Assembly: GCF_000143415.4 (NCBI RefSeq)
Contig: NW_003314278.1
Location: 962,682-1,026,681, forward strand
Reading direction: 5' to 3'
Source of the DNA: Selaginella moellendorffii
Lineage: Eukaryota > Plantae > Lycopodiophyta
DNA: 64,000 nucleotides
Shown: one piece after another, positions 12,375 through 63,411 of the stretch
Layout: every line of letters begins with the position of its first letter
Numbering within the stretch: position 1 is the stretch's first letter
Program-made: the position numbers and the translations under genes
Notes under the pieces: model-generated
Databases searched by the model: none
What the model was told of the DNA's origin: nothing
What the model saw: the letters and a program-made list of their open reading frames with translations, nothing else

Positions 12375-13482
12375 TGTAAGGAACCAACTCGCCGAGGTGT
12401 CGTAGGCTAAGGGAACCCCGAAAGCATGACCAAAATGACAAAGAGTTCATCGGATGGGACCAAGTCAAAGATCGAGTCCAAGACCGACTCTAGGACCGAG
12501 TTCGAGATAGAGTCCGGAATCGAGTCCAAGACCGACTCGGGGACCGAGTTCGAGTCCGAGTTCGAGACCGAGTTCGAGACAGAGTCCGAGATCCGAAATC
12601 GGGTCCGAGACCGAGTCCGAAGTCGAGTCCGAGGTCGGGCCCGAGATCGGGTCCGAGATCGAGTCCGCGATCGAGTCCGAGACCAAATCCGAAGTCGGAT
12701 CCGAAATCGGATCCGAGATCGAGCCAGAGACTAAGTCCAAATACTAATACGGGTCAAGGGGTGAAAGCCCAAAGCGTGCGTCCCCCAGGGGGGGGGGGCT
12801 GCAGGGGGTTCCAAAAGTATAGTAGGGATAGTGAGGTCCAGGAACCAGTTTTGAAGGGACTCTCCAGTTGGGCTTCCAAACCGACTTGAGGTTGGGACTG
12901 GGACTAAGGGGCCTTGGGTGGGAGTGAGCATGGACTTGGCTGGTGCCGGAGGGGCCATCCAAGGAAGTGCTCAAGAGCAGCTCCCACTCCCGAAAGGGAA
13001 ACCGATTGCGGTGCTCCCGGATCATGTGGAGTGGTGCCCCACTTGAGTACCATGCGGCTCATTGGTCCTCGCCCTTCCTAGGGGCTTGGGCCTTCCTTCG
13101 GGATGGAAGTGGGGGGCGAGAGGTACCCATACCGGGCCGTTAGGCCACGGTGTTTCGCCCCGGCGTCCCGAAGCAAGTGTTGCACTCAAGACTTGGGATT
13201 TAGAGGGTCCCATGATCAAGTCTTGTGGTACCAAGGGATGTTAGGAACCTGGAAGCTTGGTGTGCTTGGCTGCTTGTGCTTGCGGGGAGTGTAGCCGAAC
13301 CTTAAGTCCAGTCTAACCCGGGGAGGGGGATTGGGAGTGATTTGGGAATCCGTGGAAGGATGGCTAACACCCCGTTGCTCGTGCAGTGAGTAGCTGAAAC
13401 CAAGTAGGAGCTGGTACCATAGGCGAGAACCTTGGCAAGGGAACTTAGCAAAAGCCAAGGCAGTGTTGGACGGATAGACGAG

Positions 13483-13548
13483 GTAAGCTGGCAAATTGGA
13501 AAGGAAAAATTTGTGGCTTACAATTTGGTATCGGAGCCTTTTCCTCAG
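13483..13548 (+). other. Candidate 66-nt spliceosomal intron spanning the U5 end and PBS of B1 (B2 equivalent 27254-27319, minus)
   Basis: AG|GTAAGC donor, CTTAC branch-like site ~28 nt before the acceptor, CCTTTTCCTCAG| acceptor; gag ATG follows 33 nt later. Confidence 0.65.
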
Positions 13549-13581
13549 TTCTAGCGAAGGATAGAGGCGGATTGCTGGGAG

Positions 13582-16500
13582 ATGGCAAGGGCAGGGCGTA
13601 AGCGAACCCAGGCGGAGACGGAACCTCCGCCAGAGCTGGAGCCTCCGGTCGAACAAGAGGCTATGGATGAGGAATCTTTGCATGAGGAGGACTCCAGTGA
13701 GGAAACCTCCAAACAGGAGTCCGGTGGCGAGGTTCGGTCGTCCAAGGCTCAATTGGACGTGCTAGAAGGACAGTTGGCACAGACCAATACCCTGCTGGAA
13801 ACTCTCGTACGCAAGCTAAAGTGTGACGAGAGGCGGAAGAAAAAGAAAAAGACTGCGGATGCTGGCAGCGCAGAAGGTGCGGATCTTTCGGCCGGGACTG
13901 AGGCAAAACCAGACAAGGTCGAACAGACCGAAGTGGAATCAGTCCCTCAGGCAATTCCCAAGTACAAACCAAAGCCCCCACCGGTCTTCAAGGGAGTGAA
14001 TGACTATAAGGTGGTGGAGGATTGGTTTTACGATATGGAGGACTACTTCCGAGCGTTGCGGTTACCAAGCTCGGAGAAGGTCCCATGTGCAAAACCATAC
14101 TTGGCAGATAATGCCAAGTCTTGGTGGAGAACAACGGAGGCCAACGAAGGACCGGTGGTCACTTGGGACATGATGAAGGCGAGGATCCGCGCAACATATG
14201 TTCCTCCGAATGCCACTCTGCATCTGAGGGATGAACTGAGTAGGCTGAAACAGACAGGAACCATCCAGGAATATGTGAATGGGTTCATGGCAAAGAGGAT
14301 ACTTGTCACGGACATGGGGGATATGGATGCATTCCATGCCTTCATATCAGGTTTGCAAACCTGGGCTCGCGGCGAGGTGATGAGGTGGAACCCGACCAAC
14401 TACAAGGAAGCGTTGGATGCGGCCATCAAGGTGCATTTCAACGATAACCTGCGAAAGGGGAACACGACGGGGTCGGGATCCACATTTAGCAAAGGGGCCA
14501 AACCAAGGGGAACGTATAGCAAGGGGAAATTCAAAAGGAGTTTCTCTAAGAATGAGTCCTCGGGGTTCCGGAAAGGCAAATCCGGTGGCCAGCGAGCGAG
14601 TACGTGGGGGAGTCAAGCGAAAAAGGACAAACCCACGAATAAGAAGGTCAAGTCGTATAGCAGCGTGGGAAACAACGTATGCTACAACTGCGGCGAAGCG
14701 GGACACTTCTCGAGGGAATGTCCCTACCCGAAGAAGGCTAGAGCCAATATGGCCATCAAGTCGGGTGAAGTCCAAACTGAGGTATGTGATCCAGTCCCTA
14801 ACTCAAAGTTACTCATTACACGAGCAACTTTGGTAGAGAGTCGTTCGCGACATCTACTAGCCCTCCAAGGGAAGCTCGGAGGTAGCTTTGTTAAGATCCT
14901 TATTGACACGGGTGCTTCGGATAATTTTGTGGCTGCAGACATAGTCCGGCAAGCCGGACTAACGGTGCAGCGGCTAGGCGAACCAAGGACTATAGAATTT
15001 GTTCAGGGTAGCCAAAGCACCGATGAGGTACTTCGACAAGCGAGAGTCGAAGTGGGGACATGGAAAGTGGACATGGATTTCACCGTCTTGGATATGGCGG
15101 GATTTGACGTGATCTTCGGAATGGATTGGTTTAATCGGTTCGTGGTAGCGCTGCATGGACAAGGTAGGAACCTTGTGGTATTGGCGAATGCCCAAGGAAG
15201 AAGATCTAGGGTGGAGGCCCAGGATCTAAAGGTAGGGCAAAGCAAGGCCAAAGAGTCATGCTTGAACCTGGTGTCCACGAGAGGACAACTCACTAAAGGA
15301 ACTAAGGCAGCCTTTTTGTGCTTACTCTCGGTGAAGAGTGACAAAAAGACAAGAACGGAAGAAGTGCCTTTAGTGATCCAGCGAGTGTTGGACCAATTCC
15401 AGGATACCATGCCGGAGGAGCTACCGGCGGGGTTGCCCCCCGCACGACCGATAGAACATAAGATTGAGCTTGTCGAGGGCGCTGAGGCGGTGGTTCGTCC
15501 CCCCTATCGTTTGAACGAAAAAGAACTCAAGGAGCTCAAGTGCCAACTAGAGGAGTTGGTGGGCAAAGGGTATGTTAGGTTGAGCAAGTTGCCGTATGGG
15601 GCGCCGGTATTATTTGTGAAAAAGAAAGATGGATCTATGCGCATGTGCATAGATTACCGGTTGCTCAACAAGTATACCAAGAAGAACAAGTACCCGTTGC
15701 CAAGGATTGAGGACCTGTTCGATAGGTTGGGAAAGGCAAAATACTTCTCGAGGATTGACCTAAGGTCAGGATACTACCAGATCAGGGTAGCCGAGGAAGA
15801 TGTCGAGAAGACAACCTGTCGAACGAGGTATGGGAGCTTTGAGTTTTTGGTGATGCCCTTTGGGCTGTGCAATGCGCCGGCAACGTTTTCGGCGTTGATG
15901 AACCACGTCTTTGTACCCTATCTGGATCACTTTGTGGTCGTCTATATTGACGACATCCTGATCTATAGCGAGACGCTAGAGGAGCATGCCGAACACTTGG
16001 CGAAGGTGTTTGAGAAACTAAGGGAACATAAACTGTATGCTAAAGAAAGCAAATGTGACTTTGCTCAGCAAGAGGTAAAGTTTCTCGGGCATGTGGTGGG
16101 CCAGGACGGGCTCAAGGTGGACCCGGAGAAGGTCCAAGCGATCCAGGAATGGGAGCGACCATCGAATGTACATGAGTTGAGGGCGTTCTTGGGGCTATGC
16201 AACTACTATCGAAAGTTTATCAGACACTATTCGAGAGTAGCCCTGCCCTTAACGGATCAAACGGGAAAAGGGAAGATGGTATGGACAGCGCAATGCGAGG
16301 CGGCATTCGTCCACCTCAAAGGGAAGTTGAGGAAGGCTCCGATGTTGGCATTACCGGACTTTGGTAAGGACTTTGAGGTAGACACGGATGCTTCGGACTT
16401 TGCGTTAGGCGCAGTTTTGAAGCAAGACAACCATCCAGTAGCGTTCTTCTCGAAGAAGCTGGACAAGGCTCAACGGAAGTGGCCTGCCCACGAGAAGGAA

Positions 16501-17393
16501 TTGTTTGCGGTGGTCAAGGCGCTCAAGGAGTGGCGACACTACCTTGGGAGACACTTCAAGGTTTAGGCAGCTGGAGGATTATTTGCGATGCTATGTCTCG
16601 GGAGACCAGACCGATTGGGTAAGTCATTTGGGACTTGCGGAAATGTGTTATAACAACTCACCACATTCGAGTATCGGGGTGAGTCCATGGGAAGTCATCA
16701 ATGGGTGAGCTATTGAAGGTCATGTGGAACTCGGCGTGGCCGAGTATCATGGAGAGTTACCCGCAGTGGAGGCATTCACGGCGGAAAGACTCAACATTTG
16801 GAATCTAGTGAGGGATTCCTTGGAACGGGCTCAACAAAGGCAAACCAAGTACGCAAACCTAAAGCGCCGGGACGTAGAGTTCCAAGCTGGGGAGAAGGTG
16901 TGGCTGAACACCAAAAACCTTAGGCTACCAAGTGGGATCAGCCGAAAGTTGACCCAAAGGTAAAAATGCATGTATTCCTGTAAATGAATTGATCTTGAGT
17001 TCCTTAAGCAGGTTCGCGGGGCCTTACGAGATTGAGGCACGAATTGGTAAAGTGGCTTACCGACTCCGACTTCCTCGAGAGATGGGGAAGATGCACCCAG
17101 TGTTCCATGTGAACTTACTCAAGCCGTACTTTGAGGATCCGCTTCGCAAAGACCAAGTAAGACCTTTACCTGAGGTTATCCAAGGGGAAGAGGAATACGA
17201 AGTCGAGGCCATCCTCAATGCGCGCAAGAGCAAGCGACAAGGACGCGAGGTGAGAGAGTTCCATGTGAAGTGGAAAGGATTTCCACACTGCGAAGCAACA
17301 TGGGAACCGGAGGAGAACCTAGCGAACGCGCGAGATCTAGTGGAGGAATTTCTGCAAGGCAGAACTCTATGTACTTATGCAAAGTTCAATTAA
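13582..17393 (+). pseudogene. gag-pol: B1 gag-pol (Gag, CCHC, PR, RT, RNase H; integrase N-terminal half deleted; integrase C-terminus and chromodomain retained)
   Basis: 994-aa ORF with [25 protein letters not shown] and DASD; joins RQLEDYLRC out of frame at 16565; 52-nt intron at 16960-17011; chromodomain YEVEAIL..VKWKG..TWEP. Confidence 0.93.
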
Positions 17394-17479
17394 AAATATC
17401 AATTTGCAAAGTTGAGCAAGTGGCATATGTTGGGACCCGAAGGCGCGCCAAAGGTGAGCTAATTAGCATGGGTTAGCTA

Positions 17480-17797
17480 GGTCGACCAGGCGTAGGGAGC
17501 TACGCCCGACTCCCTGCGGGGATGTCGAAACCGTAGACGTATTCTACGGAGGTTGGGTTCGAGTCCCAACCCCCTAGTAAAGCAAGGCTGGGTTCAAGTC
17601 CCGACCCCATACTAGGGCGTGGTGAGGGGAGGAGTATAGGGACACCTATATTCCGTTGTCATGAGCTCTTGGCCGGGGAGGCTAACTTAGGCACACCGCT
17701 AAGTGGGGGGATGCCCCTGGAGACATGGTCAACAAGTCGTAGGATAAAAAAGAGACGTTCGATGTGGGCATCGAACTTCTTCTATGGGTGGTGGAGT
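17480..17797 (+). other. B 3' UTR structured module (two T-arm/B-box hairpins, GACA-loop hairpin, pre-PPT hairpin)
   Basis: GGTTGGG-TTCGAGT-CCCAACC at 17551-17571; GGGTTCAAGTCCC at ~17590; GGAGTATAGG-GACA-CCTATATTCC; GTTCGATG-TGGG-CATCGAAC. Also at 22044-22360 and 60089-60400 (minus). Confidence 0.7.
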
Positions 17798-18950
17798 TGT
17801 AAGGAACCAACTCGCCGAGGTGTCGTAGGCTAAGGGAACCCCGAAAGCATGACCAAAATGACAAAGAGTTCATCGGATGGGACCAAGTCAAAGATCGAGT
17901 CCAAGACCGACTCTAGGACCGAGTTCGAGATAGAGTCCGGAATCGAGTCCAAGACCGACTCGGGGACCGAGTTCGAGTCCGAGTTCGAGACCGAGTTCGA
18001 GACGGAGTCCGAGATCCGAAATCGGGTCCGAGACCGAGTCCGAAGTCGAGTCCGAGGTCGGGCCCGAGATCGGGTCCGAGATCGAGTCCGCGATCGAGTC
18101 CGAGACCGAATCCGAAGTCGGATCCGAAATCGGATCCGAGATCGAGCCAGAGACTAAGTCCAAATACTAATACGGGTCAAGGGGTGAAAGCCCAAAGCGT
18201 GCGTCCCCCAGGGGGGGGGGGCTGCAGGGGGTTCCAAAAGTATAGTAGGGATAGTGAGGTCCAGGAACCAGTTTTGAAGGGACTCTCCAGTTGGGCTTCC
18301 AAACCGACTTGAGGTTGGGACTGGGACTAAGGGGCCTTGGGTGGGAGTGAGCATGGACTTGGCTGGTGCCGGAGGGGCCATCCAAGGAAGTGCTCAAGAG
18401 CAGCTCCCACTCCCGAAAGGGAAACCGATTGCGGTGCTCCCGGCTCATGTGGAGTGGTGCCCCACTTGAGTACCATGCGGCTCATTGGTCCTCGCCCTTC
18501 CTAGGGGCTTGGGCCTTCCTTCGGGATGGAAGTGGGGGGCGAGAGGTACCCATACCGGGCCGTTAGGCCACGGTGTTTCGCCCCGGCGTCCCGAAGCAAG
18601 TGTTGCACTCAAGACTTGGGATTTAGAGGGTCCCATGATCAAGTCTTGTGGTACCAAGGGATGTTAGGAACCTGGAAGCTTGGTGTGCTTGGCTGCTTGT
18701 GCTTGCGGGGAGTGTAGCCGAACCTTAAGTCCAGTCTAACCCGGGGAGGGGGATTGGGAGTGATTTGGGAATCCGTGGAAGGATGGCTAATACTCCGTTG
18801 CTCGTGCAGTGAGTAGCTGAAACCAAGTAGGAGCTGGTACCATAGGTGAGAACCTTGGCAAGGGAACTTAGCAAAAGCCAAGGCAGTGTTGGACGGATAG
18901 ACGAGGTAAGCTGGCAAATTGGAAAGGAAAAATTTGTGGCTTACACTGCT

Positions 18951-20894
18951 GCTGCATTGAAGGCCTCTAGCCTGGCCCTTGCAGTGTCCAGGTTGGCCTT
19001 GGTACCTAGCAGAAAGAGTGCTGTATCATCCGCAAATGCGCAGTCGAGCAGGTCCCTTCCCACCATTTGAGTTCCTGGGAGTTGTTGTCTTTCCTTGGGT
19101 AACTCCACACCCCTGATTCCTTCACCTTCCGCCAGGAACGCCCCTAGAGCCTCCGCAACCATGAGGAAGAGGTACGGAGCCAACGGGCAGCCTTGACGCA
19201 TTGACCTCCCTAGCCGAAACCGCGGGCCTGTTTCTCCATTGATGACCACCCTGCTTGATGCTCCCCGGTACAGGAGAGCGATGCGTGTTACCATGGGCGT
19301 TGGGATTCCTATCCGTCTCATACAGTCCTCCAGGAAGTCCCAGTCCACCCGGTCGTACGCCTTCTTGAAATCCAGTAGCCACGCCACCACATTCTGCCTC
19401 GAGGATTTTGCCCATCTTTGGGCCAGGAGATAGGTCCAGATATTCTCCGCAATCTGTCTCCCTGGTACAAAGCCTGTCTGTTGTTCTCGAATAATGATGG
19501 GCATCACCGGTTGCAATTTAAGCGCCATCGCCTTGGCGTAGATTTTGTACGCTGTGGTGAGCATTGTTATTGGTCTCCAGTTGCGTAGCTCTTGAAGGTC
19601 CCCTCTCTTTGGAAGCAGTGCGATCTGGCCCTCCAGTATCTCCGCCGGGAGCTGCCCTGCTTGCTGTGCCTTCGTCCAGGCCTCCATCATCAGCGGACCA
19701 ATCACCTCCCAGTTGCTCTGAAAGAATCTCGGGGGCAGTCCATCTACCCCGGGCATTTTGTCATCACTCAATCTATCCAAGGCCTTGTGGAGATCTTCTA
19801 TGGTGAGATTTGCCACGAGTTTTTTGTTCCATTTCTGTGGGACTCTATACCGCAGAGTTTTTAACACCTTTTTTGCTGCCTGGGCTCTGGCTGTAGTCCC
19901 TGGTTGTGCTGTGTACAGCTGCTCGTAGAACCTTTGTGCCAGTTCCTGCATGCCTTGCTGATCCTCCACCAACTTTCCATCTTCTGCCTTGAGACCAAGA
20001 ATGGGTGGTGAGTCTGAGACTGGGCGGATACCTCTGTAGAAGGCCTTGTTCAACAGCCACTTGTTTACTGCCCATGAGTCCTCTTGAGTACGCACTCTGG
20101 AGCTCCAAGCCGCGAATTCCCTCTCTTGTAGTTCTGCTTCCCTCTGATCCAAGGCCGCTTGCCACCTTCCTGCGTCCTTGGCCGTCAGCACCATCCTCTG
20201 AGCTGCTGCCACCTTCTTCCTTGCTAGGCGCAGCTCCTTCATTACTTTGCCCTTTATCACCCGCTGTCTCTCTCTCAGCTGGTCCGAGCAGCCTTGCAGT
20301 ACTGTGTTGAGCACCAGTTCGCTCCCCTCTAGAATCCGACTAACTTGTGCTGCTGCCTGTGCATCTGCCAGGGTGTGGATTGAGATGGCTCACTGCGCTG
20401 CTTTACCTTTGTCTTTCTGGAGCTTGATTGTACACCGAACTGGGTCGTGGTCCGAAAAAGAGGGGAAACAAGGCCATGTCTTGAGACTCCCGCCATCTTT
20501 TCACACTCTAGGGGAGGCGTAGATCCTGTCCAGTTGTGACTGACAGCTTGTTGACTCCCGACGGGTGTAGGGGTGTGCATGGGGGGCGAATCCTTCCTCG
20601 TGCTGCAGGTCCACGAGGTCCAGCTGTTCTACCAGTGCCAGCCATTGTAGTTGTTCCCGGCCCTAGATGGTCTCTTGGCCTCCTCTCCTGTCCTCTGTGT
20701 TTTCCACCATGTTGAAATCCCCTATCACCAGCCAATGCTCTACCCGGCCTCTTCCTTTCACTCGAAGTTCTTCCCAGAAAAGGGTCCGGGCCTGTCTGTT
20801 GGTTGGGGCGTAGACGTTTAGGATCCCCACTCGTCCAAAGTGCAGGCTGAGCACCAGGAGCTGTGCTCTCCACGGCACCAACACTTCATGATCC
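18951..20894 (-). pseudogene. LINE ORF2 endonuclease C-terminal half plus reverse transcriptase
   Basis: 457-aa ORF 18941-20314 (PGVDG, WRPITML, LDFKKAYDRV, QGCPLAPYLF, FADD); upstream NVYAP/GDFN; a few stops. Confidence 0.92.
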
Positions 20895-22447
20895 TGTAAG
20901 CCACAAATTTTTCCTTTCCAATTTGCCAGCTTACCTCGTCTATCCGTCCAACACTGCCTTGGCTTTTGCTAAGTTCCCTTGCCAAGGTTCTCGCCTATGG
21001 TACCAGCTCCTACTTGGTTTCAGCTACTCACTGCACGAGCAACGGAGTGTTAGCCATCCTTCCACGGATTCCCAAATCACTCCCAATCCCCCTCCCCGGG
21101 TTAGACTGGACTTAAGGTTCGGCTACACTCCCCGCAAGCACAAGCAGCCAAGCACACCAAGCTTCCAGGTTCCTAACATCCCTTGGTACCACAAGACTTG
21201 ATCATGGGACCCTCTAAATCCCAAGTCTTGAGTGCAACACTTGCTTCGGGACGCCGGGGCGAAACACCGTGGCCTAACGGCCCGGTATGGGTACCTCTCG
21301 CCCCCCACTTCCATCCCGAAGGAAGGCCCAAGCCCCTAGGAAGGGCGAGGACCAATGAGCCGCATGGTACTCAAGTGGGGCACCACTCCACATGAGCCGG
21401 GAGCACCGCAATCGGTTTCCCTTTCGGGAGTGGGAGCTGCTCTTGAGCACTTCCTTGGATGGCCCCTCCGGCACCAGCCAAGTCCATGCTCACTCCCACC
21501 CAAGGCCCCTTAGTCCCAGTCCCAACCTCAAGTCGGTTTGGAAGCCCAACTGGAGAGTCCCTTCAAAACTGGTTCCTGGACCTCACTATCCCTACTATAC
21601 TTTTGGAACCCCCTGCAGCCCCCCCCCCCCTGGGGGACGCACGCTTTGGGCTTTCACCCCTTGACCCGTATTAGTATTTGGACTTAGTCTCTGGCTCGAT
21701 CTCGGATCCGATTTCGGATCCGACTTCGGATTCGGTCTCGGACTCGATCGCGGACTCGATCTCGGACCCGATCTCGGGCCCGACCTCGGACTCGACTTCG
21801 GACTCGGTCTCGGACCCGATTTCGGATCTCGGACTCCGTCTCGAACTCGGTCTCGAACTCGGACTCGAACTCGGTCCCCGAGTCGGTCTTGGACTCGATT
21901 CCGGACTCTATCTCGAACTCGGTCCTAGAGTCGGTCTTGGACTCGATCTTTGACTTGGTCCCATCCGATGAACTCTTTGTCATTTTGGTCATGCTTTCGG
22001 GGTTCCCTTAGCCTACGACACCTCGGCGAGTTGGTTCCTTACAACTCCACCACCCATAGAAGAAGTTCGATGCCCACATCGAACGTCTCTTTTTTATCCT
22101 ACGACTTGTTGACCATGTCTCCAGGGGCATCCCCCCACTTAGCGGTGTGCCTAAGTTAGCCTCCCCGGCCAAGAGCTCATGACAACGGAATATAGGTGTC
22201 CCTATACTCCTCCCCTCACCACGCCCTAGTATGGGGTCGGGACTTGAACCCAGCCTTGCTTTACTAGGGGGTTGGGACTCGAACCCAACCTCCGTAGAAT
22301 ACGTCTACGGTTTCGACATCCCCGCAGGGAGTCGGGCGTAGCTCCCTACGCCTGGTCGACCTAGCTAACCCATGCTAATTAGCTCACCTTTGGCGCGCCT
22401 TCGGGTCCCAACATATGCCACTTGCTCAACTTTGCAAATTGATATTT

Positions 22448-25400
22448 TTAATTGAACTTTGCATAAGTACATAGAGTTCTGCCTTGCAGAAATTCCTCCA
22501 CTAGATCTCGCGCGTTCGCTAGGTTCTCCTCCGGTTCCCATGTTGCTTCGCAGTGTGGAAATCCTTTCCACTTCACATGGAACTCTCTCACCTCGCGTCC
22601 TTGTCGCTTGCTCTTGCGCGCATTGAGGATGGCCTCGACTTCGTATTCCTCTTCCCCTTGGATAACCTCAGGTAAAGGTCTTACTTGGTCTTTGCGAAGC
22701 GGATCCTCAAAGTACGGCTTGAGTAAGTTCACATGGAACACTGGGTGCATCTTCCCCATCTCTCGAGGAAGTCGGAGTCGGTAAGCCACTTTACCGATTC
22801 GTGCCTCAATCTCGTAAGGCCCCGCGAACCTGCTTAAGGAACTCAAGATCAATTCATTTACAGGAATACATGCATTTTTACCTTTGGGTCAACTTTCGGC
22901 TGATCCCACTTGGTAGCCTAAGGTTCTTGGTGTTCAGCCACACCTTCTCCCCAGCTTGGAACTCTACGTCCCGGCGCTTTAGGTTTGCGTACTTGGTTTG
23001 CCTTTGTTGAGCCCGTTCCAAGGAATCCCTCACTAGATTCCAAATGTTGAGTCTTTCCGCCGTGAATGCCTCCACTGCGGGTAACTCTCCATGATACTCG
23101 GCCACGCCGAGTTCCACATGACCTTCAATAGCTCGCCCATTGATGACTTCCCATGGACTCACCCCGATACTCGAATGTGGTGAGTTGTTATAACACATTT
23201 CCGCAAGTCCCAAATGACTTACCCAATCGGTCTGGTCTCCCGAGACATAGCATCGCAAATAATCCTCCAGCTGCCTATTCACCCTTTCCGTTTGTCCGTC
23301 TGTCAAGAAGTGTTAGGACCACCAAACTTGACTTAATACCCCATACCTGTCTGTGGGTGATAGGCTGTGCTGAATTTCAACTTGGTGCGATACTGTTCCA
23401 GGAGGGTCCTCCAGAACCTACTAGTGAAGATCTTATCTCGATCTGAGATAATCTCCTCTGGCCTTCCCCGCACTCGAACCACTTGTTCGAAGAACAGTTT
23501 CGCCACACCTTCCGCATCCACCTCCGTTGTGGTGGGTATGAAATGTGCCATCTTCGAAAATCGGTCCACCACCACGAATATCGCATCGAACCCCTCGCTT
23601 GGGGGTAGTCCCGTGATGAAGTCCATCGTGAGACATTTCCACGGACGATCTGGAATTGGGATGCTTTGCAACAAGCCCCCACTAGCCTTAGTCACGGCTT
23701 TGACCTGCTGACATGTTGGACATGTCTTTACATAGTCTTGGACGTCCTTAGCCATATCTGGCCAATGGTACTTCCTCTTGAGTAAGCCCATCGTCTTGGG
23801 CACTCCGCCGTGTCCCGCAAGAGGTCCGTCATGACACTCTTCTAAGGCTACCTTCCTTAGTCCACCTTCTGGAACATACACCCTCGTTTGTTTGTAATAA
23901 ATGAGTCCATTGCGTTCCGCATAGCCCGTTTTCTCTTCCGTTGGCGGCTCACCTCTCTGGTGAGCTTCCCGTGCCTCCAGATTCCTCAACAACACTTCTT
24001 GTGCTAGACCATCGTTCTCATATGCTGTCCGCACATCGTCCCAGAAGGTTGCTGTTGCGCTGGAGATCGCCAACCTCAAGCTCGCTTTTCGACTTAGCGC
24101 ATCTGCCACGATGTTGCTCTTCCCAGGCTTGTACAGAATCTCGCAATCAAACTCGGCCAAGGCATTGGCCCACCGACCTTGTTTCCCTCTCAGGTCGGGT
24201 TGTGACAAGAAGTGTTTCGTTGCCACATTGTCCGTGTAAACCTTGAAGTGTCTCCCAAGGTAGTGTCGCCACTCCTTGAGCGCCTTGACCACCGCAAACA
24301 ATTCCTTCTCGTGGGCAGGCCACTTCCGTTGAGCCTTGTCCAGCTTCTTCGAGAAGAACGCTACTGGATGGTTGTCTTGCTTCAAAACTGCGCCTAACGC
24401 AAAGTCCGAAGCATCCGTGTCTACCTCAAAGTCCTTACCAAAGTCCGGTAATGCCAACACCGGAGCCTTCCTCAACTTCCCTTTGAGGTGGACGAATGCC
24501 GCCTCGCATTCCGCTGTCCATACCATCTTCCCTTTTCCCGTTTGATCCGTTAAGGGCAGGGCTACTCTCGAATAGTGTCTGATAAACTTTCGATAGTAGT
24601 TGCATAGCCCCAAGAACGCCCTCAACTCATGTACATTCGATGGTCGCTCCCATTCCTGGATCGCTTGGACCTTCTCCGGGTCCACCTTGAGCCCGTCCTG
24701 GCCCACCACATGCCCGAGAAACTTTACCTCTTGCTGAGCAAAGTCACATTTGCTCTCTTTAGCATACAGTTTATGTTCCCTTAGTTTCTCAAACACCTTC
24801 GCCAAGTGTTCGGCATGCTCCTCTAGCGTCTCGCTATAGATCAGGATGTCGTCAATATAGACGACCACAAAGTGATCCAGATAGGGTACAAAGATGTGGT
24901 TCATCAACGCCGAAAACGTTGCCGGCGCATTGCACAGCCCAAAGGGCATCACCAAAAACTCAAAGCTCCCATACCTCGTTCGACAGGTTGTCTTCTCGAC
25001 ATCTTCCTCGGCTACCCTGATCTGGTAGTATCCTGACCTTAGGTCAATCCTCGAGAAGTATTTTGCCTTTCCCAACCTATCGAACAGGTCCTCAATCCTT
25101 GGCAACGGGTACTTGTTCTTCTTGGTATACTTGTTGAGCAACCGGTAATCTATGCACATGCGCATAGATCCATCTTTCTTTTTCACAAATAATACCGGCG
25201 CCCCATACGGCAACTTGCTCAACCTAACATACCCTTTGCCCACCAACTCCTCTAGTTGGCACTTGAGCTCCTTGAGTTCTTTTTCGTTCAAACGATAGGG
25301 GGGACGAACCACCGCCTCAGCGCCCTCGACAAGCTCAATCTTATGTTCTATCGGTCGTGCGGGGGGCAACCCCGCCGGTAGCTCCTCCGGCATGGTATCC

Positions 25401-27220
25401 TGGAATTGGTCCAACACTCGCTGGATCACTAAAGGCACTTCTTCCGTTCTTGTCTTTTTGTCACTCTTCACCGAGAGTAAGCACAAAAAGGCTGCCTTAG
25501 TTCCTTTAGTGAGTTGTCCTCTCGTGGACACCAGGTTCAAGCATGACTCTTTGGCCTTGCTTTGCCCTACCTTTAGATCCTGGGCCTCCACCCTAGATCT
25601 TCTTCCTTGGGCATTCGCCAATACCACAAGGTTCCTACCTTGTCCATGCAGCGCTACCACGAACCGATTAAACCAATCCATTCCGAAGATCACGTCAAAT
25701 CCCGCCATATCCAAGACGGTGAAATCCATGTCCACTTTCCATGTCCCCACTTCGACTCTCGCTTGTCGAAGTACCTCATCGGTGCTTTGGCTACCCTGAA
25801 CAAACTCTATAGTCCTTGGTTCGCCTAGCCGCTGCACCGTTAGTCCGGCTTGCCGGACTATGTCTGCAGCCACAAAATTATCCGAAGCACCCGTGTCAAT
25901 AAGGATCTTAACAAAGCTACCTCCGAGCTTCCCTCGGAGGGCTAGTAGATGTCGTGAACGACTCTCTACCAAAGTTGCTCGTGTAATGAGTAACTTTGAG
26001 TTAGGGACTGGATCACATACCTCAGTTTGGACTTCACCCGACTTGATGGCCATATTGGCTCTGGCCTTCTTCGGGTAGGGACATTCCCTCGAGAAGTGTC
26101 CCGCTTCGCCGCAGTTGTAGCATACGTTGTTTCCCACGCTGCTATACGACTTGACCTTCTTATCCGTGGGTTTGTCCTTTTTCGCTTGACTCCCCCACGT
26201 ACTCGCTCGCTGGCCACCGGATTTGCCTTTCCGGAACCCCGAGGACTCATTCTTAGAGAAACTCCTTTTGAATTTCCCCTTGCTATACGTTCCCCTTGGT
26301 TTGGCCCCTTTGCTAAATGTGGATCCCGACCCCGTCGTGTTCCCCTTTCGCAGGTTATCATTGAAATGCACCTTGATGGCCGCATCCAACGCTTCCTTGT
26401 AGTTGGTCGGGTTCCACCTCATCACCTCGCCGCGAGCCCAGGTTTGCAAACCTGATATGAAGGCATGGAACGCATCCATATCCCCCATGTCCGTGACAAG
26501 TATCCTCTTTGCCATGAACCCATTCACATATTCCTGGATGGTTCCTGTCTGTTTCAGCCTACTCAGTTCATCCCTCAGATGTAGAGTGGCATTCGGAGGA
26601 ACATATGTTGCGCGGATCCTCGCCTTCATCATGTCCCAAGTGACCACCGGTCCTTCGTTGGCCTCCGTTGTTCTCCACCAAGACTTGGCATTATCTGCCA
26701 AGTATGGTTTTGCACATGGGACCTTCTCCGAGCTTGGTAACCGCAACGCTCGGAAGTAGTCCTCCATATCGTAAAACCAATCCTCCACCACCTTATAGTC
26801 ATTCACTCCCTTGAAGACCGGTGGGGGCTTTGGTTTGTACTTGGGAACTGCCTGAGGGACTGATTCCACTTCGGTCTGTTCGACCTTGTCTGGTTTTGCC
26901 TCAGTCCCGGCCGAAAGATCCGCACCTTCTGCGCTGCCAGCATCCGCAGTCTTTTTCTTTTTCTTCCGCCTCTCGTCACGCTTTAGCTTGCGTACGAGAG
27001 TTTCCAGCAGGGCATTGGTCTGTGCCAACTGTCCTTCTAGCACGTCCAATCGAGCCTTGGACGACCGAACCTCGCCACCGGACTCCTGTTTGGAGGTTTC
27101 CTCACTGGAGTCCTCCTCATGCAAAGATTCCTCATCCATAGCCTCTTGTTCGACCGGAGGCTCCAGCTCTGGCGGAGGTTCCAAATCCGCCTGGGTTCGC
27201 TTACGCCCTGCCCTTGCCAT
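22448..27220 (-). CDS. gag-pol: Spliced Gag-PR-RT-RNaseH-IN-chromodomain polyprotein, predicted 1557 aa: join(27220-23347, 23299-22882, 22829-22448)
   Basis: Removing the GT-AG introns at 23300-23346 and 22830-22881 gives one 4674-nt frame, restoring YHPQT-D-GQTER (exact D-35-E spacing) and KLTQ-R-FAGPY. Confidence 0.9.
22830..22881 (-). other. 52-nt phase-2 spliceosomal intron before the GPY/F motif (B1 16960-17011; B3 60874-60925)
   Basis: AAG|GTAAAA...TTAAGCAG|G; AT-rich; the split Arg codon is AG/G in B1 and B2 and synonymous AG/A in B3. Confidence 0.9.
23300..23346 (-). other. 47-nt phase-1 spliceosomal intron in the integrase core (B3 equivalent 61344-61390)
   Basis: CAG|GTATGG...CTAAC...TTGACAG|AC; contains an in-frame stop and shifts frame. 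Confidence 0.9.
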
Positions 27221-28429
27221 CTCCCAGCAATCCGCCTCTATCCTTCGCTAGAACTGAGGAAAAGGCTCCGATACCAAATTGTAAGCCACAAATTTTTCCT
27301 TTCCAATTTGCCAGCTTACCTCGTCTATCCGTCCAACACTGCCTTGGCTTTTGCTAAGTTCCCTTGCCAAGGTTCTCGCCTATGGTACCAGCTCCTACTT
27401 GGTTTCAGCTACTCACTGCACGAGCAACGGAGTATTAGCCATCCTTCCACGGATTCCCAAATCACTCCCAATCCCCCTCCCCGGGTTAGACTGGACTTAA
27501 GGTTCGGCTACACTCCCCGCAAGCACAAGCAGCCAAGCACACCAAGCTTCCAGGTTCCTAACATCCCTTGGTACCACAAGACTTGATCATGGGACCCTCT
27601 AAATCCCAAGTCTTGAGTGCAACACTTGCTTCGGGACGCCGGGGCGAAACACCGTGGCCTAACGGCCCGGTATGGGTACCTCTCGCCCCCCACTTCCATC
27701 CCGAAGGAAGGCCCAAGCCCCTAGGAAGGGCGAGGACCAATGAGCCGCATGGTACTCAAGTGGGGCACCACTCCACATGAGCCGGGAGCACCGCAATCGG
27801 TTTCCCTTTCGGGAGTGGGAGCTGCTCTTGAGCACTTCCTTGGATGGCCCCTCCGGCACCAGCCAAGTCCATGCTCACTCCCACCCAAGGCCCCTTAGTC
27901 CCAGTCCCAACCTCAAGTCGGTTTGGAAGCCCAACTGGAGAGTCCCTTCAAAACTGGTTCCTGGACCTCACTATCCCTACTATACTTTTGGAACCCCCTG
28001 CAGCCCCCCCCTGGGGGACGCACGCTTTGGGCTTTCACCCCTTGACCCGTATTAGTATTTGGACTTAGTCTCTGGCTCGATCTCGGATCCGATTTCGGAT
28101 CCGACTTCGGATTCGGTCTCGGACTCGATCGCGGACTCGATCTCGGACCCGATCTCGGGCCCGACCTCGGACTCGACTTCGGACTCGGTCTCGGACCCGA
28201 TTTCGGATCTCGGACTCCGTCTCGAACTCGGTCTCGAACTCGGACTCGAACTCGGTCCCCGAGTCGGTCTTGGACTCGATTCCGGACTCTATCTCGAACT
28301 CGGTCCTAGAGTCGGTCTTGGACTCGATCTTTGACTTGGTCCCATCCGATGAACTCTTTGTCATTTTGGTCATGCTTTCGGGGTTCCCTTAGCCTACGAC
28401 ACCTCGGCGAGTTGGTTCCTTACAGATCC

Positions 28430-28707
28430 CTCGCTTGCGCTGACCATCTAGTGGAGACCACAATGGCTGTGCCCCCCCCTAGCCTGGACCGAGCTGCTAC
28501 CGCTGTGTTCCACCACGTTTTCCCTCTCATGCCGAAGTTGTAGTCCGGTTCAGCGTCCATCTTGTGTTCCTGGATGCATAGAAAGTCTATCCCGCCTTCC
28601 AGTCCCAACTCCCTTATATGCGACTTAAGTTGGATTTTTTTGTGGAGCCTATTGTCCGTGGAACTGAGGCCTCGGCAGTTCCATATCAAGCACGTTAAGG
28701 TTGTCAT
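28430..28707 (-). pseudogene. LINE ORF2 N-terminus (APE endonuclease)
   Basis: MTTLTCLIWNCRGL...FLCIQEHK...GGGTAIVV. Confidence 0.88.
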
Positions 28708-58993: not shown

Positions 58994-60491
58994 CTTGGCT
59001 TTTGCTAAGTTCCCTTGCCAAGGTTTTCGCCTATGGTACCAACTCCTACTTGGTCCTACTTGCTTTCAGCTACTCATTGCACGAGCAACGGAGCGTTAGC
59101 CATCCATCCACGGATTCCCAATCTCTCCCAATCCCCCTCCCCGGGTTAGACTAGACTTAAGGTTCGGCTACACTCCCCGCAAGCACAAGCAGCCAAGCAC
59201 ACCAAGCTTCCAGGTTCCTAACATCCCTTGGTACCACAAGGCTTGATCATGGGACCCTCTAAATCCCAAGTCTTGAGTGCAACACTTGCTTCGGGACACC
59301 GGGGCGAAACACCGTGGCCTAGCGGCCCGGTATGGGTACCTCTACCCCCCCACTTCCATCCCGAAGGAAGGCCCAAGCCACTAGGAAGGGCAAGGACCAA
59401 TGAGCCGCATGGTACTCAAATGGGGCACCACTCCACATGAGCCGGGAGCACCGTAATCGGTTTCTCTTTCGGGAGTGGGAGCTGCTCTTGAGCACTTCCT
59501 TGGATGGCCCCTCCGGCACCAACCAAGTCCATGCTCACTCCCACCCAAGGCCCCTCGGTCCCAGTCCCAACCTCAAGTCAGTTTGGGAGCCCCACTGGAG
59601 AGTCCCTTCTAAACTGGTTCCTGGACCTCACTATCCCTACTATACTTTTGGAACCCCCTGCAGCCCCCCTCCCCCTGGGAGACGCACGCTTTGGGCTTTC
59701 GCCCCTTAACCCGTATTAGTATTTGGACTTAGTCTCTGGCTCGATCTTGGACCCGATTTCGGATCTGACTTCGGATTCGGTCTCAGACTCGATCTCGGAC
59801 TCGATCTCGGACCCGATCTCGGACCCGACCTCGGACTTGACCTCGGACTCGGTCTCGGACCCGATTTTGGATCTCGGACTCCGTCTCGAACTCAGTCTCG
59901 AACTCGGACTCGAACTCGGTCCCCGAGTCGGTCTCGGATTCGATTCCGGACTCTATCTCAAACTCGGTCCTAGAGTCGGTCTTAGACTCGATCCTCGACT
60001 TAGTTCCATCTGATGAACTCTTTGTCATTTTGGTCATGCTTTCGGGGTTCCTTTAGCCTACGACACCTCGACGAGCTGGTTCCTTACAACTCCACCACCT
60101 ATAGAAGAAGTTTGATGCCCACATCGAACGTCTCGTTTTATCCTACGACTTGTTGACCATGTCTCCGGGGGCATCCCCCCACTTAGCGGTGTGCCTAAGT
60201 TAGCCTCCCCGGCCAAGAGCCCATGACAACGGAATATAGGTGTCCCTATACTCCTCCCCTCACCACGCCCTAGTATGGGGTCGGGACTTGAACCCAACCT
60301 TGCTTTACTAGGGGGTTGGGACTCGAACCCAACCTCCGTAGAATACGTCTACAGATTCGACATCCCCGCAAGGAGTCGGGCGTAGCTCCCTACGCCTGGT
60401 CGACCTAGCTAACCCATGCTAATTAGCTTACCTTCGGTGCGCCTTCGGGTCCCAACATATGCCACTTGCTCAACTTTGCAAATTGATATTT

Positions 60492-63411
60492 TTAATTGAA
60501 CTTTGCATAAGTACATAGAGTTCTACCTTGCAGAAATTCCTCCACTAGATCTCGCGCGTTCGCTAGGTTCTCCTCTGGTTCCCATATTGCTTCGCAGTGT
60601 GGAAATCCTTTCCACTTCACATGGAACTCTCTCACCTCGCGTCCTTGTCGCTTGCTCTTGCGTGCATTGAGGATGGCCTCGAGTTCGTATTCCTCTTCCC
60701 CTTGGATAACCTCAGGTAAAGGTCTTACTTGGTCCTTGCGAAGCGGATCCTCAAAGTGCGGCTTGAGCAAGTTCACGTGGAACATTGGGTGCATCTTCCC
60801 CATCTCTCGAGGAAGTCGGAGTCGGTAAGCCACTTTACCGATTCGTGCCTCAATCTCGTAAGGCCCCGCGAATCTGCTTAAGGAACTCAAGATCAATTCA
60901 TTTATAGGAATACATGCATTTTTACCTTTGGGTCAACTTTCGGCTAATCCCACTTGGTAGCCTGAGGTTCTTAGTGTTCAGCCACACCTTCTCCCCAGCT
61001 TGGAACTCTACATCCCGGCGCTTTAGGTTTGCGTACTTGGTTTGCCTTTGTTGAGCTCGTTCCAAGGAATCCCTCACTAGATTCCAAATGTTGAGTCTTT
61101 CCACCGTGAATGCCTCCACTGCGGGTAGCTCTCCATGATACTCGGCCACGCCGAGTTCCACAGGACCTTCAATAGCTCGCCCATTGATGACTTCCCATGG
61201 ACTCACCCTGATACTCGAATGTGGTGAGTTGTTATAACACATTTCCGCAAGTCCCAAATGACTTACCCAATCGGTCTGGTCTCCCGAGACATAGCATCGC
61301 AAGTAATCCTCCAGCTGCCTATTCACCCTTTCCGTTTGTCCGTCTGTCAAGAAGTGTTAGTGTCACCAAACTTGACTTAATACCCCATACCTGTCTGTGG
61401 GTGATAGGCGGTGCTGAATTTCAACTTGGTGCGATACTGTTCCAGGAGAGTCCTCCAGAACCTACTAGTGAAGATCTTATCTCGATCTGAGATGATCTCT
61501 TCCGGCCTTCCCCGCACTCGAACCACTTGTTCGAAGAACAGCTTTGCCACACCTTCCGCATCCACTTCTGTTGTGGTGGGTATGAAATGTGCCATTTTCA
61601 AAAATCGGTCCACCACCACGAATATCGCATCAAACCCCTCGCTTGGGGGAAGTCCCATGATGAAGTCCATCGTAAGACATTTCCATGGACGATCTAGAAT
61701 TGGGATGCTTTGCAACAAGCCCCCACTAGCCTTAGTCACAGCTTTGACCTGCTGACATGTTGGACATGTCTTTACATAGTCTTGGACGTCCTTAGCCATA
61801 TCTGGCCAATGGTACTTCCTCTTGAGTAAGCCCATCGTCTTGGGCACTCCGCCGTGTCCCGCAAGAGGTCCGTCATGACACTCTTCTAAGGCTACCTTCC
61901 TTAGTTCCCCTTCTGGAACATACACCCTCGTTTGCTTGTAATAGATGAGTCCGTTGCGTTCCGCATAGCCCATTTTCTCTTCCGTTGGCAGCTCACCTCT
62001 CTGGTGAGCTTCCCGCGCCTCTAGATTCCTTAGCAACACTTCTTGTGCTAGAGCATCGTTCTCATATGCTGTCCGCACATCGTCCCAGAAGGTTGCTGTT
62101 GCGCTAGATATCACCAACCTTAAGCTCGCTTTTCGACTTAGCACATCTGCCACGATGTTGCTCTTCCTAGGCTTGTACAGAATCTCGCAATCAAACTCGG
62201 CCAAGGCATTGGCCCACCGACCTTGTTTCCCTCTCAGGTCGGGCTGTGACAAGAAGTGTTTCGTTGCCACATTGTCCGTGTAAACCTTGAAGTGTCTCCC
62301 AAGGTAGTGTCGCCACTCCTTGAGCGCCTTGACCACTGCAAATAATTCCTTCTCGTGGGCAGGCCACTTCCGTTGAGCCTTGTCCAACTTCTTCGAGAAG
62401 AACGCTACTGGATGGTTGTCTTGCTTCAAAACTGCGCCCAACGCAAAGTCTGAAGCATCCGTGTCTACCTCAAAGTCCTTACCAAAATCTGGTAATGCCA
62501 ACACCGGAGCCTTCCTCAACTTCCCTTTGAGGTGGACGAATGCCGCCTCGCATTCTGCTGTCCATACCATCTTCCTTTTTCCTGTTTGGTCCGTTAAGGG
62601 CAAGGCTACTCTCGAATAGTATCTGATAAACTTTTGATAGTAGTTGCATAGCCCCAAGAACGCCCTCAACTCATGTACATTTGATGGTCGCTCCCATTCC
62701 TGGATCGCTTGGACCTTCTCCGGGTCCACCTTGAGCCCGTCCTGGCCCACCACATGCCCGAGAAACTTTACCTCTTGTTGAGCAAAGTCACATTTGCTCT
62801 CTTTAGCATACAGTTTGTGTTCCCTTAGTTTCTCAAACACCTTCGCCAAGTGTTCGGCATGCTCCTCTAGCGTCTCGCTATAGATCAGGATGTCGTCGAT
62901 ATAGACGACCACGAAGTGATTCAGATAGGGTACAAAGATGTGGTTCATTAGCGCCGAAAATGTGGCCGGCGCATTGCATAGCCCAAAGGGCATCACCAGA
63001 AACTCAAAACTCCCATACCTCGTTCGACAGGTTGTCTTCTCGACATCTTCCTCGGCTACCCTGATCTGGTAGTATCCTGACCTTAGGTCAATCCTCGAGA
63101 AGTATTTTGCCTTTCCCAACCTATCGAACAGGTCCTCAATTCTTGGCAAAGGGTACTTGTTCTTCTTTGTATACTTGTTGAGCAACTGGTAGTCTATGCA
63201 CATGCGCATAGAACCATCTTTCTTTTTCACAAATAACACCAGCGCCCCATACGGCGACTTGCTCAACCTAACATACCCTTTGTCCACCAACTCCTCTAGT
63301 TGGCTCTTGAGCTCCTTGAGTTCTTTTTCGTTCAAACGATAGGGGGGACGAACCACTGCCTCAGCACCCTCCACCAACTCAATCTTATGTTCTATCGGTC
63401 GTGCGGGGGGC
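60492..63411 (-). pseudogene. pol: B3 pol fragment (RT, RNase H, intron-split integrase, chromodomain)
   Basis: ORFs 61377-63530, 60922-61350 and 60492-60896 join in frame after removing 61344-61390 and 60874-60925. Confidence 0.9.

What the first reader, a model, noticed from the sequence alone, without database searches (positions are those of the whole stretch)
22830..23346. A young LTR retrotransposon whose integrase is split by two spliceosomal introns
Seen: B pol breaks at HPQT|DGQTER and KLTQ|RFAGPY. The gaps are 47 nt (AG|GTATGG..CTAAC..TTGACAG) and 52 nt (AG|GTAAAA..TAAGCAG). Removing them gives one 1557-aa frame with exactly 35 residues between the second catalytic D and the E, and attaches the GPY/F motif and chromodomain. 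The 52-nt intron is in all three copies; the 47-nt intron is in B2 and B3 and falls within B1's deletion. B3 differs from B2 by three clustered substitutions inside the 47-nt intron and a synonymous change in the split Arg codon, while splice signals are unchanged. The old gypsy at 1081-1140 has no insertion at the homologous site. Known: retroelements copy RNA, so introns should be purged. The spliced LTR elements I know (copia-type gag splicing, the Ogre intron between protease and RT) do not have introns inside the integrase core. Inference: unspliced genomic RNA encodes a catalytically dead integrase, so integration depends on splicing.
Basis: partly seen in the sequence, partly recalled or inferred. 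Interest (0 to 1): 0.95.

Follow-up and report, generated by a model that had tools for sequence, protein, structure and literature searches.

The report
Jumping gene with introns in integrase
A young, multi-copy plant retrotransposon (SM1-Galahad of the spikemoss Selaginella) carries two short true introns inside its integrase gene, so it can make a working integrase only from spliced RNA, although it copies itself from unspliced RNA, which is unusual for elements that multiply through RNA.

Summary
On the minus strand, a 7,530-bp Ty3/gypsy chromovirus (LTRs 20895-22043 and 27280-28424, TSD GGATC) has its pol frame broken at HPQT|(D)GQTER by 47 nt (23300-23346) and at KLTQ|(R)FAGPY by 52 nt (22830-22881). 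Both segments are GT..AG.

Read with X at the two junctions, the frame is 1,557 aa without a stop. It is colinear with 14 homologues and keeps the D-35-E spacing.

Assembled contigs of two probable RNA runs from different studies skip exactly these two segments, and so does one raw RNA-seq read. Exons downstream of the introns show a synonymous excess (14:7 and 14:3). Two independent insertions with their own TSDs carry the 52-nt intron, and one of them also carries the 47-nt intron.

One run's contigs also skip a 66-nt leader intron that contains the primer-binding site, and a 157-nt intron whose removal gives a Gag-only frame.

The element matches SM1-Galahad (Novikova 2012). That paper reported a 1,295-aa ORF plus two short ORFs in hundreds of copies and never mentions introns.

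That integration depends on splicing is inferred, not shown.

Ogre and EVADE/copia are precedents, so this is a new variant of a known kind. The scan has already noted this on other pieces of the genome, with one follow-up.

The parts
20895..28424 (-). Element B2, a complete chromovirus copy of 7,530 bp that matches SM1-Galahad. It is flanked by the 5-bp target-site duplication GGATC (28425-28429 and 20890-20894).
   Evidence: Self-BLAST; flank sequences; match to the published description.
27280..28424 (-). 5' LTR, 1,145 bp, TG..CA ends, with a poly-G tract at LTR position 414.
   Evidence: It has 1 mismatch plus a poly-G length difference against the 3' LTR.
20895..22043 (-). 3' LTR, 1,149 bp.
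27254..27319 (-). Intron 1, 66 nt, in the leader. It starts 40 nt before the end of the 5' LTR and contains the primer-binding site.
   Evidence: GT..AG in the sequence. An X1 contig skips exactly this stretch.
27264..27276 (-). 13-nt primer-binding site (TGGTATCGGAGCC), 3 nt after the LTR end and inside intron 1.
   Evidence: Sequence. Novikova 2012 reports a 13-bp PBS complementary to tRNA-Met for this family. Complementarity to the host tRNA was not tested here.
23347..27220 (-). Coding exon A: Gag (CCHC), protease, RT, RNase H, integrase zinc finger and the integrase core up to HPQT.
   Evidence: ORF list; Pfam.
25864..26020 (-). Intron 2, 157 nt, alternative. It lies within the open frame and holds the protease DTG motif. 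Its removal gives ...EVQTET followed by a stop, that is a Gag-only frame.
   Evidence: Sequence. An X1 contig skips it.
23300..23346 (-). Intron 3, 47 nt, phase 1. It splits the codon for the D of HPQT-D-GQTE, four residues before the catalytic Glu. It has a CTAAC branch-point motif. The 5-nt direct repeat GACAG occurs at both borders.
   Evidence: X1 and X3 contigs and one X17 RNA read skip it.
22882..23299 (-). Coding exon B: the rest of the integrase core (the E of D,D35E) and the first part of the SH3/GPY/F module.
22830..22881 (-). Intron 4, 52 nt, phase 2. It splits the Arg codon just before FAGPY. GC content is 0.33, against 0.51 for the coding sequence.
   Evidence: X1 and X3 contigs skip it ('cut +2').
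22448..22829 (-). Coding exon C: the GPY/F (SH3_Tf2-1) module and a group-I-type chromodomain, followed by the stop codon.
   Evidence: Pfam PF24626, PF22938 and PF00385.
12375..18945 (+). Element B1, an independent insertion (TSD CTGCT), 99.4-99.7% identical to B2. It has a 959-bp internal deletion (B2 23278-24236) that removes intron 3, and a nonsense change in exon B. It keeps intron 1 (13483-13548), intron 2 (14782-14938) and intron 4 (16960-17011).
58994..63411 (-). Element B3, a partial copy about 96% identical to B2. Intron 3 is at 61344-61390 and intron 4 at 60874-60925. The splice signals are kept, and the exon parts that are present are open.

Best explanation
This is a young copy of SM1-Galahad, a Galadriel-like chromovirus of Selaginella moellendorffii that carries four spliceosomal introns. 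Introns 3 (47 nt) and 4 (52 nt) lie inside the integrase gene. The host spliceosome removes them from the mRNA, and only then is there one Gag-Pol frame with the catalytic Glu, the GPY/F module and the chromodomain. Shown: the intron anatomy, the spliced RNA forms, and selection on the spliced frame. New DNA copies are made from RNA that still holds the introns. Shown: independent insertions with their own TSDs carry them. The published description of the family gives the same three-ORF layout and hundreds of copies. It follows that the RNA that is copied encodes a truncated, Glu-less integrase, and that complete integrase comes from spliced messages. This step is inferred. Most likely the introns survive because the leader intron contains the primer-binding site, so RNA that has passed through the spliceosome cannot prime reverse transcription. 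The anatomy and the splice are shown; the consequence is inferred. The alternative 157-nt intron yields a Gag-only message, as in copia and EVADE. The splice is shown; its role is inferred.
For: GT..AG borders and AG|GTA donors at all four introns; an X1 contig of 2,500 nt lies on 22501-22827, 22880-23299 and 23347-25099. X3 contigs from another study skip the 52-nt and the 47-nt segments separately. One raw RNA read of X17 skips the 47 nt, and no X17 read covers the intron interiors. X1 contigs also skip 25864-26020 and 27254-27319. The X1 and X3 contigs differ from each other at several sites, so they come from at least two source copies. The X-joined frame is 1,557 aa without a stop and is colinear with 14 homologues. 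Synonymous:nonsynonymous counts in exons B+C are 14:7 for B2 against B3 and 14:3 for B2 against the X1 contig, where 22% synonymous is expected at random (P=1.6e-5 and 2.4e-7). TSDs are GGATC for B2 and CTGCT for B1. B2's LTRs differ by 1 mismatch. Novikova 2012 reports the same 1,295-aa ORF plus two short ORFs, and hundreds of copies about 95% alike. At least eight other pieces of this genome carry the same 516-517-nt feature.
Against: The tool only guesses that X1 and X3 are RNA, and certain RNA support is a single read. No single molecule shows which introns are removed together. In particular, no RNA was seen with intron 2 kept and introns 3 and 4 removed, which is the only form that could encode complete Gag-Pol. 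Unspliced RNA was not seen at all, because depth was very low. The contigs come from copies 3-4% different from B2, so expression of B2 itself is not shown. I could not count intron-free copies in the genome. The sister family SM2-Galahad has an unbroken 1,577-aa ORF and might supply integrase in trans. RNA with intron 1 kept and introns 3 and 4 removed would be copyable, so the PBS intron alone does not fully explain why the introns persist.
Confidence: 0.8

Rival explanations
1. The two segments are passenger insertions in a non-autonomous subfamily that is moved in trans by relatives with an unbroken pol, such as SM2-Galahad. In that case the spliceosome cuts them out only because they happen to look like introns, and the element's own integrase plays no part.
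For: Novikova 2012 found no intact SM1-Galahad copy and describes a closely related single-ORF family, SM2-Galahad. B1 is plainly defective, with a deletion and a nonsense change, yet it has its own TSD. This shows that trans-mobilisation or later decay does occur.
Against: Exons B and C, which only splicing can bring into frame, show a strong synonymous excess between intron-bearing copies. Both segments restore homology to the residue. All splice signals are kept in a copy 4% diverged, while the intron interior changed. The X-joined frame of B2 has no stop over 1,557 aa.
Confidence: 0.1
2. The joined forms in X1 and X3 come from DNA. Intron-free genomic copies would then be the original, active form, and the copies in this window a side branch that picked up insertions.
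For: The tool marks X1 and X3 as 'RNA? (a guess)'. The contigs differ from B2 by 3-4%, so they come from other copies.
Against: Four separate insertions would each need to have GT..AG ends on the sense strand and exact frame or homology restoration. The joined form also lacks the primer-binding site (27254-27319), which no replicating master copy could lack. These runs yielded no contig containing the introns, although the genome holds many such copies. A run recorded as RNA gives a junction read. The published description of hundreds of copies has the three-ORF layout.
Confidence: 0.04
3. The frame breaks are bypassed during translation, by frameshifting or stop read-through, rather than by splicing.
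For: Many retroelements use recoding between gag and pol. This rests on general knowledge and has no support from this window.
Against: The 47 and 52 nt have no counterpart in any of the 14 homologues. Reading through them would add about 15-17 residues inside the D-35-E spacing and the SH3 fold, and would meet stops in every frame. Joined RNA forms exist.
Confidence: 0.01

Closest known systems
SM1-Galahad (Selaginella moellendorffii chromovirus; Novikova 2012, PMC3350952)
   Same: About 7.5 kb. LTRs about 1,146 bp with TG..CA ends and a poly-G tract of variable length. A 13-nt PBS for tRNA-Met. An ORF of exactly 3,885 nt (1,295 aa), followed by two short ORFs (paper 316 and 309 bp; here 318 and 309 nt), the last with a group-I chromodomain.
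   Different: The paper treats the element as having no intact copy and reports three ORFs. The words 'intron' and 'splic' do not occur in it. Reading the two gaps as introns, the RNA support, and the leader and gag-protease introns are additions made here.
Ogre (Tat/Ogre lineage; pea and Medicago; Steinbauerova 2008, as summarised in PMC6317226 and PMC12786077)
   Same: An LTR retrotransposon that keeps an intron in its genomic copies. The intron must be spliced out for the downstream pol frame to be translated, and only part of the transcripts are spliced.
   Different: Ogre has one intron between the gag-protease and RT-RH-INT frames, in a non-chromovirus lineage. Here two very short introns sit inside the integrase (the catalytic core and the GPY/F module) of a chromovirus. 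There is also a leader intron over the PBS and an alternative gag-protease intron.
EVADE, BARE1 and Drosophila copia short-Gag splicing (Oberlin 2017, as summarised in PMC12786077)
   Same: Intron 2 here removes the protease active-site region and creates a stop two codons after the junction, which gives a Gag-only message. This is the same logic as shGAG.
   Different: Those elements are Ty1/copia. Their pol frame is intact in the unspliced RNA, and they have no introns that must be removed to make integrase.
Retroviruses and Cer1 of C. elegans (PMC10309623)
   Same: Unspliced RNA serves as the genome and spliced RNAs serve as messages. Signals needed for replication lie in the part that splicing removes.
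   Different: In retroviruses the major donor lies downstream of the PBS, the intron removes the packaging signal, and pol is read from unspliced RNA. Here the PBS itself lies in an intron, and the integrase frame needs splicing.

Membership tests
SM1-Galahad (Novikova 2012) | Element about 7.5 kb with LTRs of 1,076/1,146 bp, TG..CA ends and a variable poly-G tract | tested here: met
   B2 is 7,530 bp with LTRs of 1,145 and 1,149 bp and TG..CA ends. The poly-G tract is 8, 12, 11 and 11 nt at LTR position 414 in the four LTRs of B2 and B1.
SM1-Galahad (Novikova 2012) | ORF of 3,885 bp (1,295 aa), then two short ORFs (316 and 309 bp), the last with a CHD_I domain | tested here: met
   ATG-to-stop lengths are 3,885, 318 and 309 nt. 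Chromo PF00385 scores E=1.4e-16 in the last ORF.
SM1-Galahad (Novikova 2012) | 13-bp PBS complementary to tRNA-Met, placed after the 5' LTR | tested here: inconclusive
   A 13-nt TGGTATCGGAGCC lies 3 nt after the LTR end. No tRNA-Met gene is in the window to check complementarity.
SM1-Galahad (Novikova 2012) | Nucleotide identity of at least 80% to the published reconstruction | not testable with these tools
Spliceosomal (U2-type) intron | GT..AG borders with a consensus donor | tested here: met
   All four introns read AG|GTA...AG.
Spliceosomal (U2-type) intron | Exact removal in RNA | tested here: met
   Contigs of X1 and X3 (two studies) and one raw RNA read of X17 show it. Caveat: the RNA nature of X1 and X3 is the tool's guess.
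Spliceosomal (U2-type) intron | Removal restores the reading frame and homology | tested here: met
Spliceosomal (U2-type) intron | Branch point and lariat | tested here: inconclusive
   Intron 3 has CTAAC 12-16 nt before the AG, kept in B3. Intron 4 has no clear motif. Lariats cannot be tested here.
Ty3/gypsy chromovirus | Gag-PR-RT-RH-IN order with a C-terminal chromodomain, plus LTRs and a 5-bp TSD | tested here: met
   Pfam domains in that order; TSDs.
Ogre-type intron-bearing LTR retrotransposon | Intron between the gag-protease and RT-RH-INT frames, in the Tat/Ogre lineage | tested here: not met
   The introns here are in the leader, the protease region and the integrase, and the element is a chromovirus. 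The logic is similar, but this element is not a member.
Copia/EVADE short-Gag splicing | Alternative intron that removes protease and gives a stop just after the junction | tested here: met
   Intron 2 (25864-26020) holds the DTG motif, and the junction reads ...TET then a stop. The element is not Ty1/copia, so only the mechanism is shared.

The most novel reading that the evidence does not exclude
SM1-Galahad has made host splicing an obligatory step of its life cycle. Its complete integrase and chromodomain can be translated only from spliced RNA. Its primer-binding site sits inside a leader intron, so spliced RNA cannot be copied. If so, message and genome are two separate RNA pools, the integrase must act in trans, and this would explain how a retroelement can gain and keep introns over hundreds of copies.
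Probability: 0.5. Interest if true: 0.8.

Novelty: new variant of a known kind. Interest (0 to 1): 0.7.

Why it matters
Elements that copy themselves through RNA are expected to lose introns. A December 2025 review still names only Ogre and EVADE as plant LTR retrotransposons with functional introns.

Here an abundant and recently active chromovirus keeps two introns inside its integrase, and a third over its primer-binding site. This gives a natural system for three questions:
- how a retroelement separates its message RNA from its genome RNA;
- whether its proteins must act in trans;
- how new introns arise, given the short direct repeats at the borders of introns 3 and 4.

It also matters for annotation. 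Families like this are scored as broken or "no intact copy" by ORF-based pipelines, as happened in 2012, so active elements may be under-counted in genomes with short introns.

Tried and rejected
- Protein database searches. The integrase region as query found only relatives at 54% identity or less and no gene model of this family. Exon B alone found nothing at E<=1e-20. Other genomic or transcript copies could therefore not be fetched this way.
- Loose ends in X17. A 30-mer at 27455 has no match in the window. Those reads come from another element that shares part of the LTR.
- The bacterial promoter and terminator scan of the LTR is not meaningful for a plant element.
- The tRNA scan found no tRNA-Met to test PBS complementarity.
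- Other long ORFs in the window are transposon remnants and not host genes. I did not confirm the species from a host gene. Selaginella moellendorffii rests on the match to the published family and on other agents' notes.
- The intron sequences have no other copies in the window beyond the three elements, so I saw no sign of a mobile "introner" source.
- Seven literature searches found no paper describing integrase introns in an LTR retrotransposon. Subscription journals and Repbase notes are not covered.
- Recoding (frameshift or read-through) and assembly artefact were considered and rejected. See the rival explanations.
- Method note. Synonymous and nonsynonymous changes were classed by coordinate bookkeeping in a script. 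The only joined protein kept has X at both junctions. No joined nucleotide sequence or consensus was printed or saved.
Full report
**What is in the sequence**

The finding lies in a Ty3/gypsy chromovirus on the minus strand, which I call B2.
- Self-comparison gives LTRs at 27280-28424 (5') and 20895-22043 (3').
- The LTRs have TG..CA ends and are flanked by the 5-bp target-site duplication GGATC.
- The two LTRs differ by one mismatch and by the length of a poly-G tract. B2 is therefore a very recent insertion.

The long ORF 23333-27220(-) encodes 1,295 aa. Pfam finds Gag, a zinc knuckle, protease, RT, RNase H, the integrase zinc finger and the integrase core, in that order. The ORF ends ...[10 protein letters not shown]. 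Two more open frames follow:
- 22878-23306(-) begins ...DGQTERVN.
- 22448-22852(-) reads FAGPY... and carries the SH3_Tf2-1/GPY/F module and a chromodomain.

**The two segments**

| Segment | Coordinates | Length | Ends (sense strand) | Phase |
|---|---|---|---|---|
| First | 23300-23346 | 47 nt | GTATGG...CTAAC...GACAG | 1 |
| Second | 22830-22881 | 52 nt | GTAAAA...AAGCAG | 2 |

- I read the frame through with X at each split codon. It is 1,557 aa long and has no stop.
- In an alignment with 14 homologues of 36-45% identity, the two X positions fall on the D/N of HPQT-D-GQTE and on the R/K before GP(Y/F). No homologue has extra residues at either site.
- There are 35 residues between the second catalytic D and the E.
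- GC content is 0.43 and 0.33 in the two segments, against 0.51 in the coding sequence.
- Two unrelated gypsy relics in the window run through the homologous sites without interruption: 1064-1327 for the first site and 36836-37264 for the second.

**Copies in the window**

- **B1** (12375-18945, plus strand) is 99.4-99.7% identical to B2 and has its own TSD, CTGCT. It is therefore an independent insertion and not a segmental duplicate. It keeps the 52-nt segment. It lacks B2 23278-24236, which includes the 47-nt segment. It also has a nonsense change in exon B.
- **B3** (58994-63411, minus strand) is about 96% identical to B2 and keeps both segments. GT, AG and CTAAC are unchanged, while three adjacent interior bases differ.

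**RNA evidence**

I laid two raw RNA-seq runs (X17, X18) and the Logan contigs of two older runs from different studies (X1, X3) on 22300-27700.
- An X1 contig of 2,500 nt lies on 22501-22827, 22880-23299 and 23347-25099, so it skips exactly both segments. The tool notes that for the 52-nt skip the cut fits equally well 2 nt further on, which gives CT..AC on the plus strand.
- In X3, one contig skips the 52 nt and another skips the 47 nt.
- One raw read of X17, which is recorded as RNA, skips the 47 nt with 46 nt on its shorter side. From the bin depths, no X17 read covers either intron interior.
- X1 and X3 share some variant sites and differ at others, so they stem from at least two source copies. 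Both are 3-4% diverged from B2.

Three caveats apply. The tool only guesses that X1 and X3 are RNA. Raw-read depth is very low (26 and 4 reads). Contigs cannot show minor isoforms. Even if the contigs were DNA, exact removal at GT..AG borders would still mean that splicing had taken place.

**Two further introns**

| Intron | Coordinates | Length | What it holds | Effect of removal |
|---|---|---|---|---|
| 1 | 27254-27319 | 66 nt | Last 40 nt of the 5' LTR, 3 spacer nt and the 13-nt PBS (27264-27276) | RNA loses its PBS |
| 2 | 25864-26020 | 157 nt | Protease DTG motif, within the open frame | Frame reads ...EVQTET then a stop |

X1 contigs skip both. Removing intron 2 gives a Gag-only message, the logic described for EVADE, BARE1 and copia. 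Other first-reader notes had predicted both introns.

**Selection**

In exons B and C, which only splicing brings into frame:
- B2 against B3 shows 14 synonymous and 7 nonsynonymous differences.
- The listed differences between B2 and the X1 contig are 14 synonymous and 3 nonsynonymous.
- Random changes would be 22% synonymous. This gives P=1.6e-5 and 2.4e-7. With a generous 35% expectation the values are P=0.003 and 9e-5.

B2 and B3 both carry the introns. The integrase C-terminus and the chromodomain have therefore been under purifying selection in lineages that carry the introns. That is hard to reconcile with a dead passenger subfamily.

**Identity of the family**

Novikova 2012 (PMC3350952) describes SM1-Galahad of Selaginella moellendorffii. 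The published features are compared with B2 below.

| Feature | Published SM1-Galahad | B2 in this window |
|---|---|---|
| Element length | about 7.5 kb | 7,530 bp |
| LTR length | 1,076/1,146 bp | 1,145/1,149 bp |
| LTR ends | TG..CA | TG..CA |
| Poly-G tract | variable length | 8 and 12 nt (11 nt in both LTRs of B1) |
| PBS | 13 bp, tRNA-Met | 13 nt, TGGTATCGGAGCC |
| Long ORF | 3,885 bp (1,295 aa) | 3,885 nt (1,295 aa) |
| Short ORFs | 316 and 309 bp | 318 and 309 nt |
| Last ORF | group-I chromodomain | Chromo PF00385 |

(Window values.)

- The paper also reports hundreds of copies about 95% alike, and no intact copy.
- The words 'intron' and 'splic' do not occur in the paper.
- The sister family SM2-Galahad has a single 1,577-aa ORF that includes the integrase and the chromodomain. 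This suggests that the integrase introns are specific to SM1.
- This match also identifies the genome, in agreement with other agents' notes.
- The scan's own notes list the same 516-517-nt feature on at least eight other pieces of the genome. One earlier follow-up reached the same reading for the 52-nt intron.

**How it most likely works**

- Shown: the intron anatomy, the spliced forms, selection on the spliced frame, and insertion of copies that carry the introns.
- Inferred: the RNA that is reverse-transcribed is unspliced. That RNA encodes Gag-PR-RT-RH and an integrase cut off before its catalytic Glu. Complete integrase with its chromodomain comes from spliced messages and acts in trans. 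RNA that has lost intron 1 has no PBS and cannot be copied, which protects the introns.
- Open: which introns are removed together on one molecule. Complete Gag-Pol needs intron 2 kept and introns 3 and 4 removed, and this form was not seen. RNA with intron 1 kept and introns 3 and 4 removed could in principle seed intron-free copies, and I could not search the genome for them.

**Origin of the introns**

Intron 3 is bordered by a 5-nt direct repeat: GACAG ends the upstream exon and also ends the intron. Intron 4 is bordered by AGGT. Short repeats of this kind are expected for insertions repaired at staggered breaks. The AG and GT parts are forced by the splice consensus, so only the repeat at intron 3 carries some weight.

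**Comparison and novelty**

- Ogre is the closest precedent. It keeps an intron that must be spliced out before pol can be read.
- EVADE, BARE1 and copia are the precedent for intron 2.
- A 2025 review names only Ogre and EVADE as plant LTR retrotransposons with functional introns.
- Seven full-text searches found no report of introns inside an integrase or over a PBS.

I rate this a new variant of a known kind, found in a family that was already published without this reading.

Noticed in passing
window 27254-27319 (-); copy in B1 at 13483-13548: A 66-nt GT..AG leader intron spans the last 40 nt of the 5' LTR and the 13-nt primer-binding site. An X1 contig skips exactly this stretch, so spliced RNA lacks the PBS.
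   Followed up: partly
window 25864-26020 (-); copy in B1 at 14782-14938: A 157-nt alternative intron within the open gag-pol frame holds the protease DTG motif. An X1 contig skips it, and the junction gives a stop two codons later (a Gag-only message, as in EVADE/copia). A 55-nt variant with the same donor and a CTAAC motif is also possible but was not seen in RNA.
   Followed up: partly
window 23296-23351 and 22826-22886 (-): Short direct repeats sit at the intron borders. GACAG ends both the upstream exon and the 47-nt intron. AGGT spans both borders of the 52-nt intron. This may be a footprint of how the introns were gained.
   Followed up: no
window 27455-27700: X17 RNA reads (14-15 of them, all with A>T at 27464) match the LTR only upstream of 27455 in the sense direction. 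They then continue into sequence that is absent from the window. Another expressed element appears to share this part of the LTR.
   Followed up: partly
window 51116-51170: The first 55 nt of the leader intron (LTR end plus PBS) recur at 96% identity inside a different repeat, near the TRIM/LARD-like chimera noted by another reader. A non-autonomous element may share the U5/PBS and the splice donor.
   Followed up: no
window 21680-21950 and 28060-28340; also 4375-4995, 10254-10866, 51430-52151, 57422-58068: A tandem-repeat block inside the Galahad LTR (it translates as runs of D/S/R/E) has 72-78% matches in four other arrays in the window. This suggests satellite-like arrays related to the LTR repeat.
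   Followed up: no
window 28423-29055 (-): An ORF with a weak endonuclease/exonuclease/phosphatase match (LINE-like) abuts the 5' end of B2. B2 seems to have inserted into an older non-LTR element.
   Followed up: no
window 20895-22043 vs 27280-28424, LTR position 414: The poly-G tract is 12 nt in one LTR of B2 and 8 nt in the other, although the LTRs otherwise differ at one base. This is fast length change in a homopolymer, or an assembly error.
   Followed up: no
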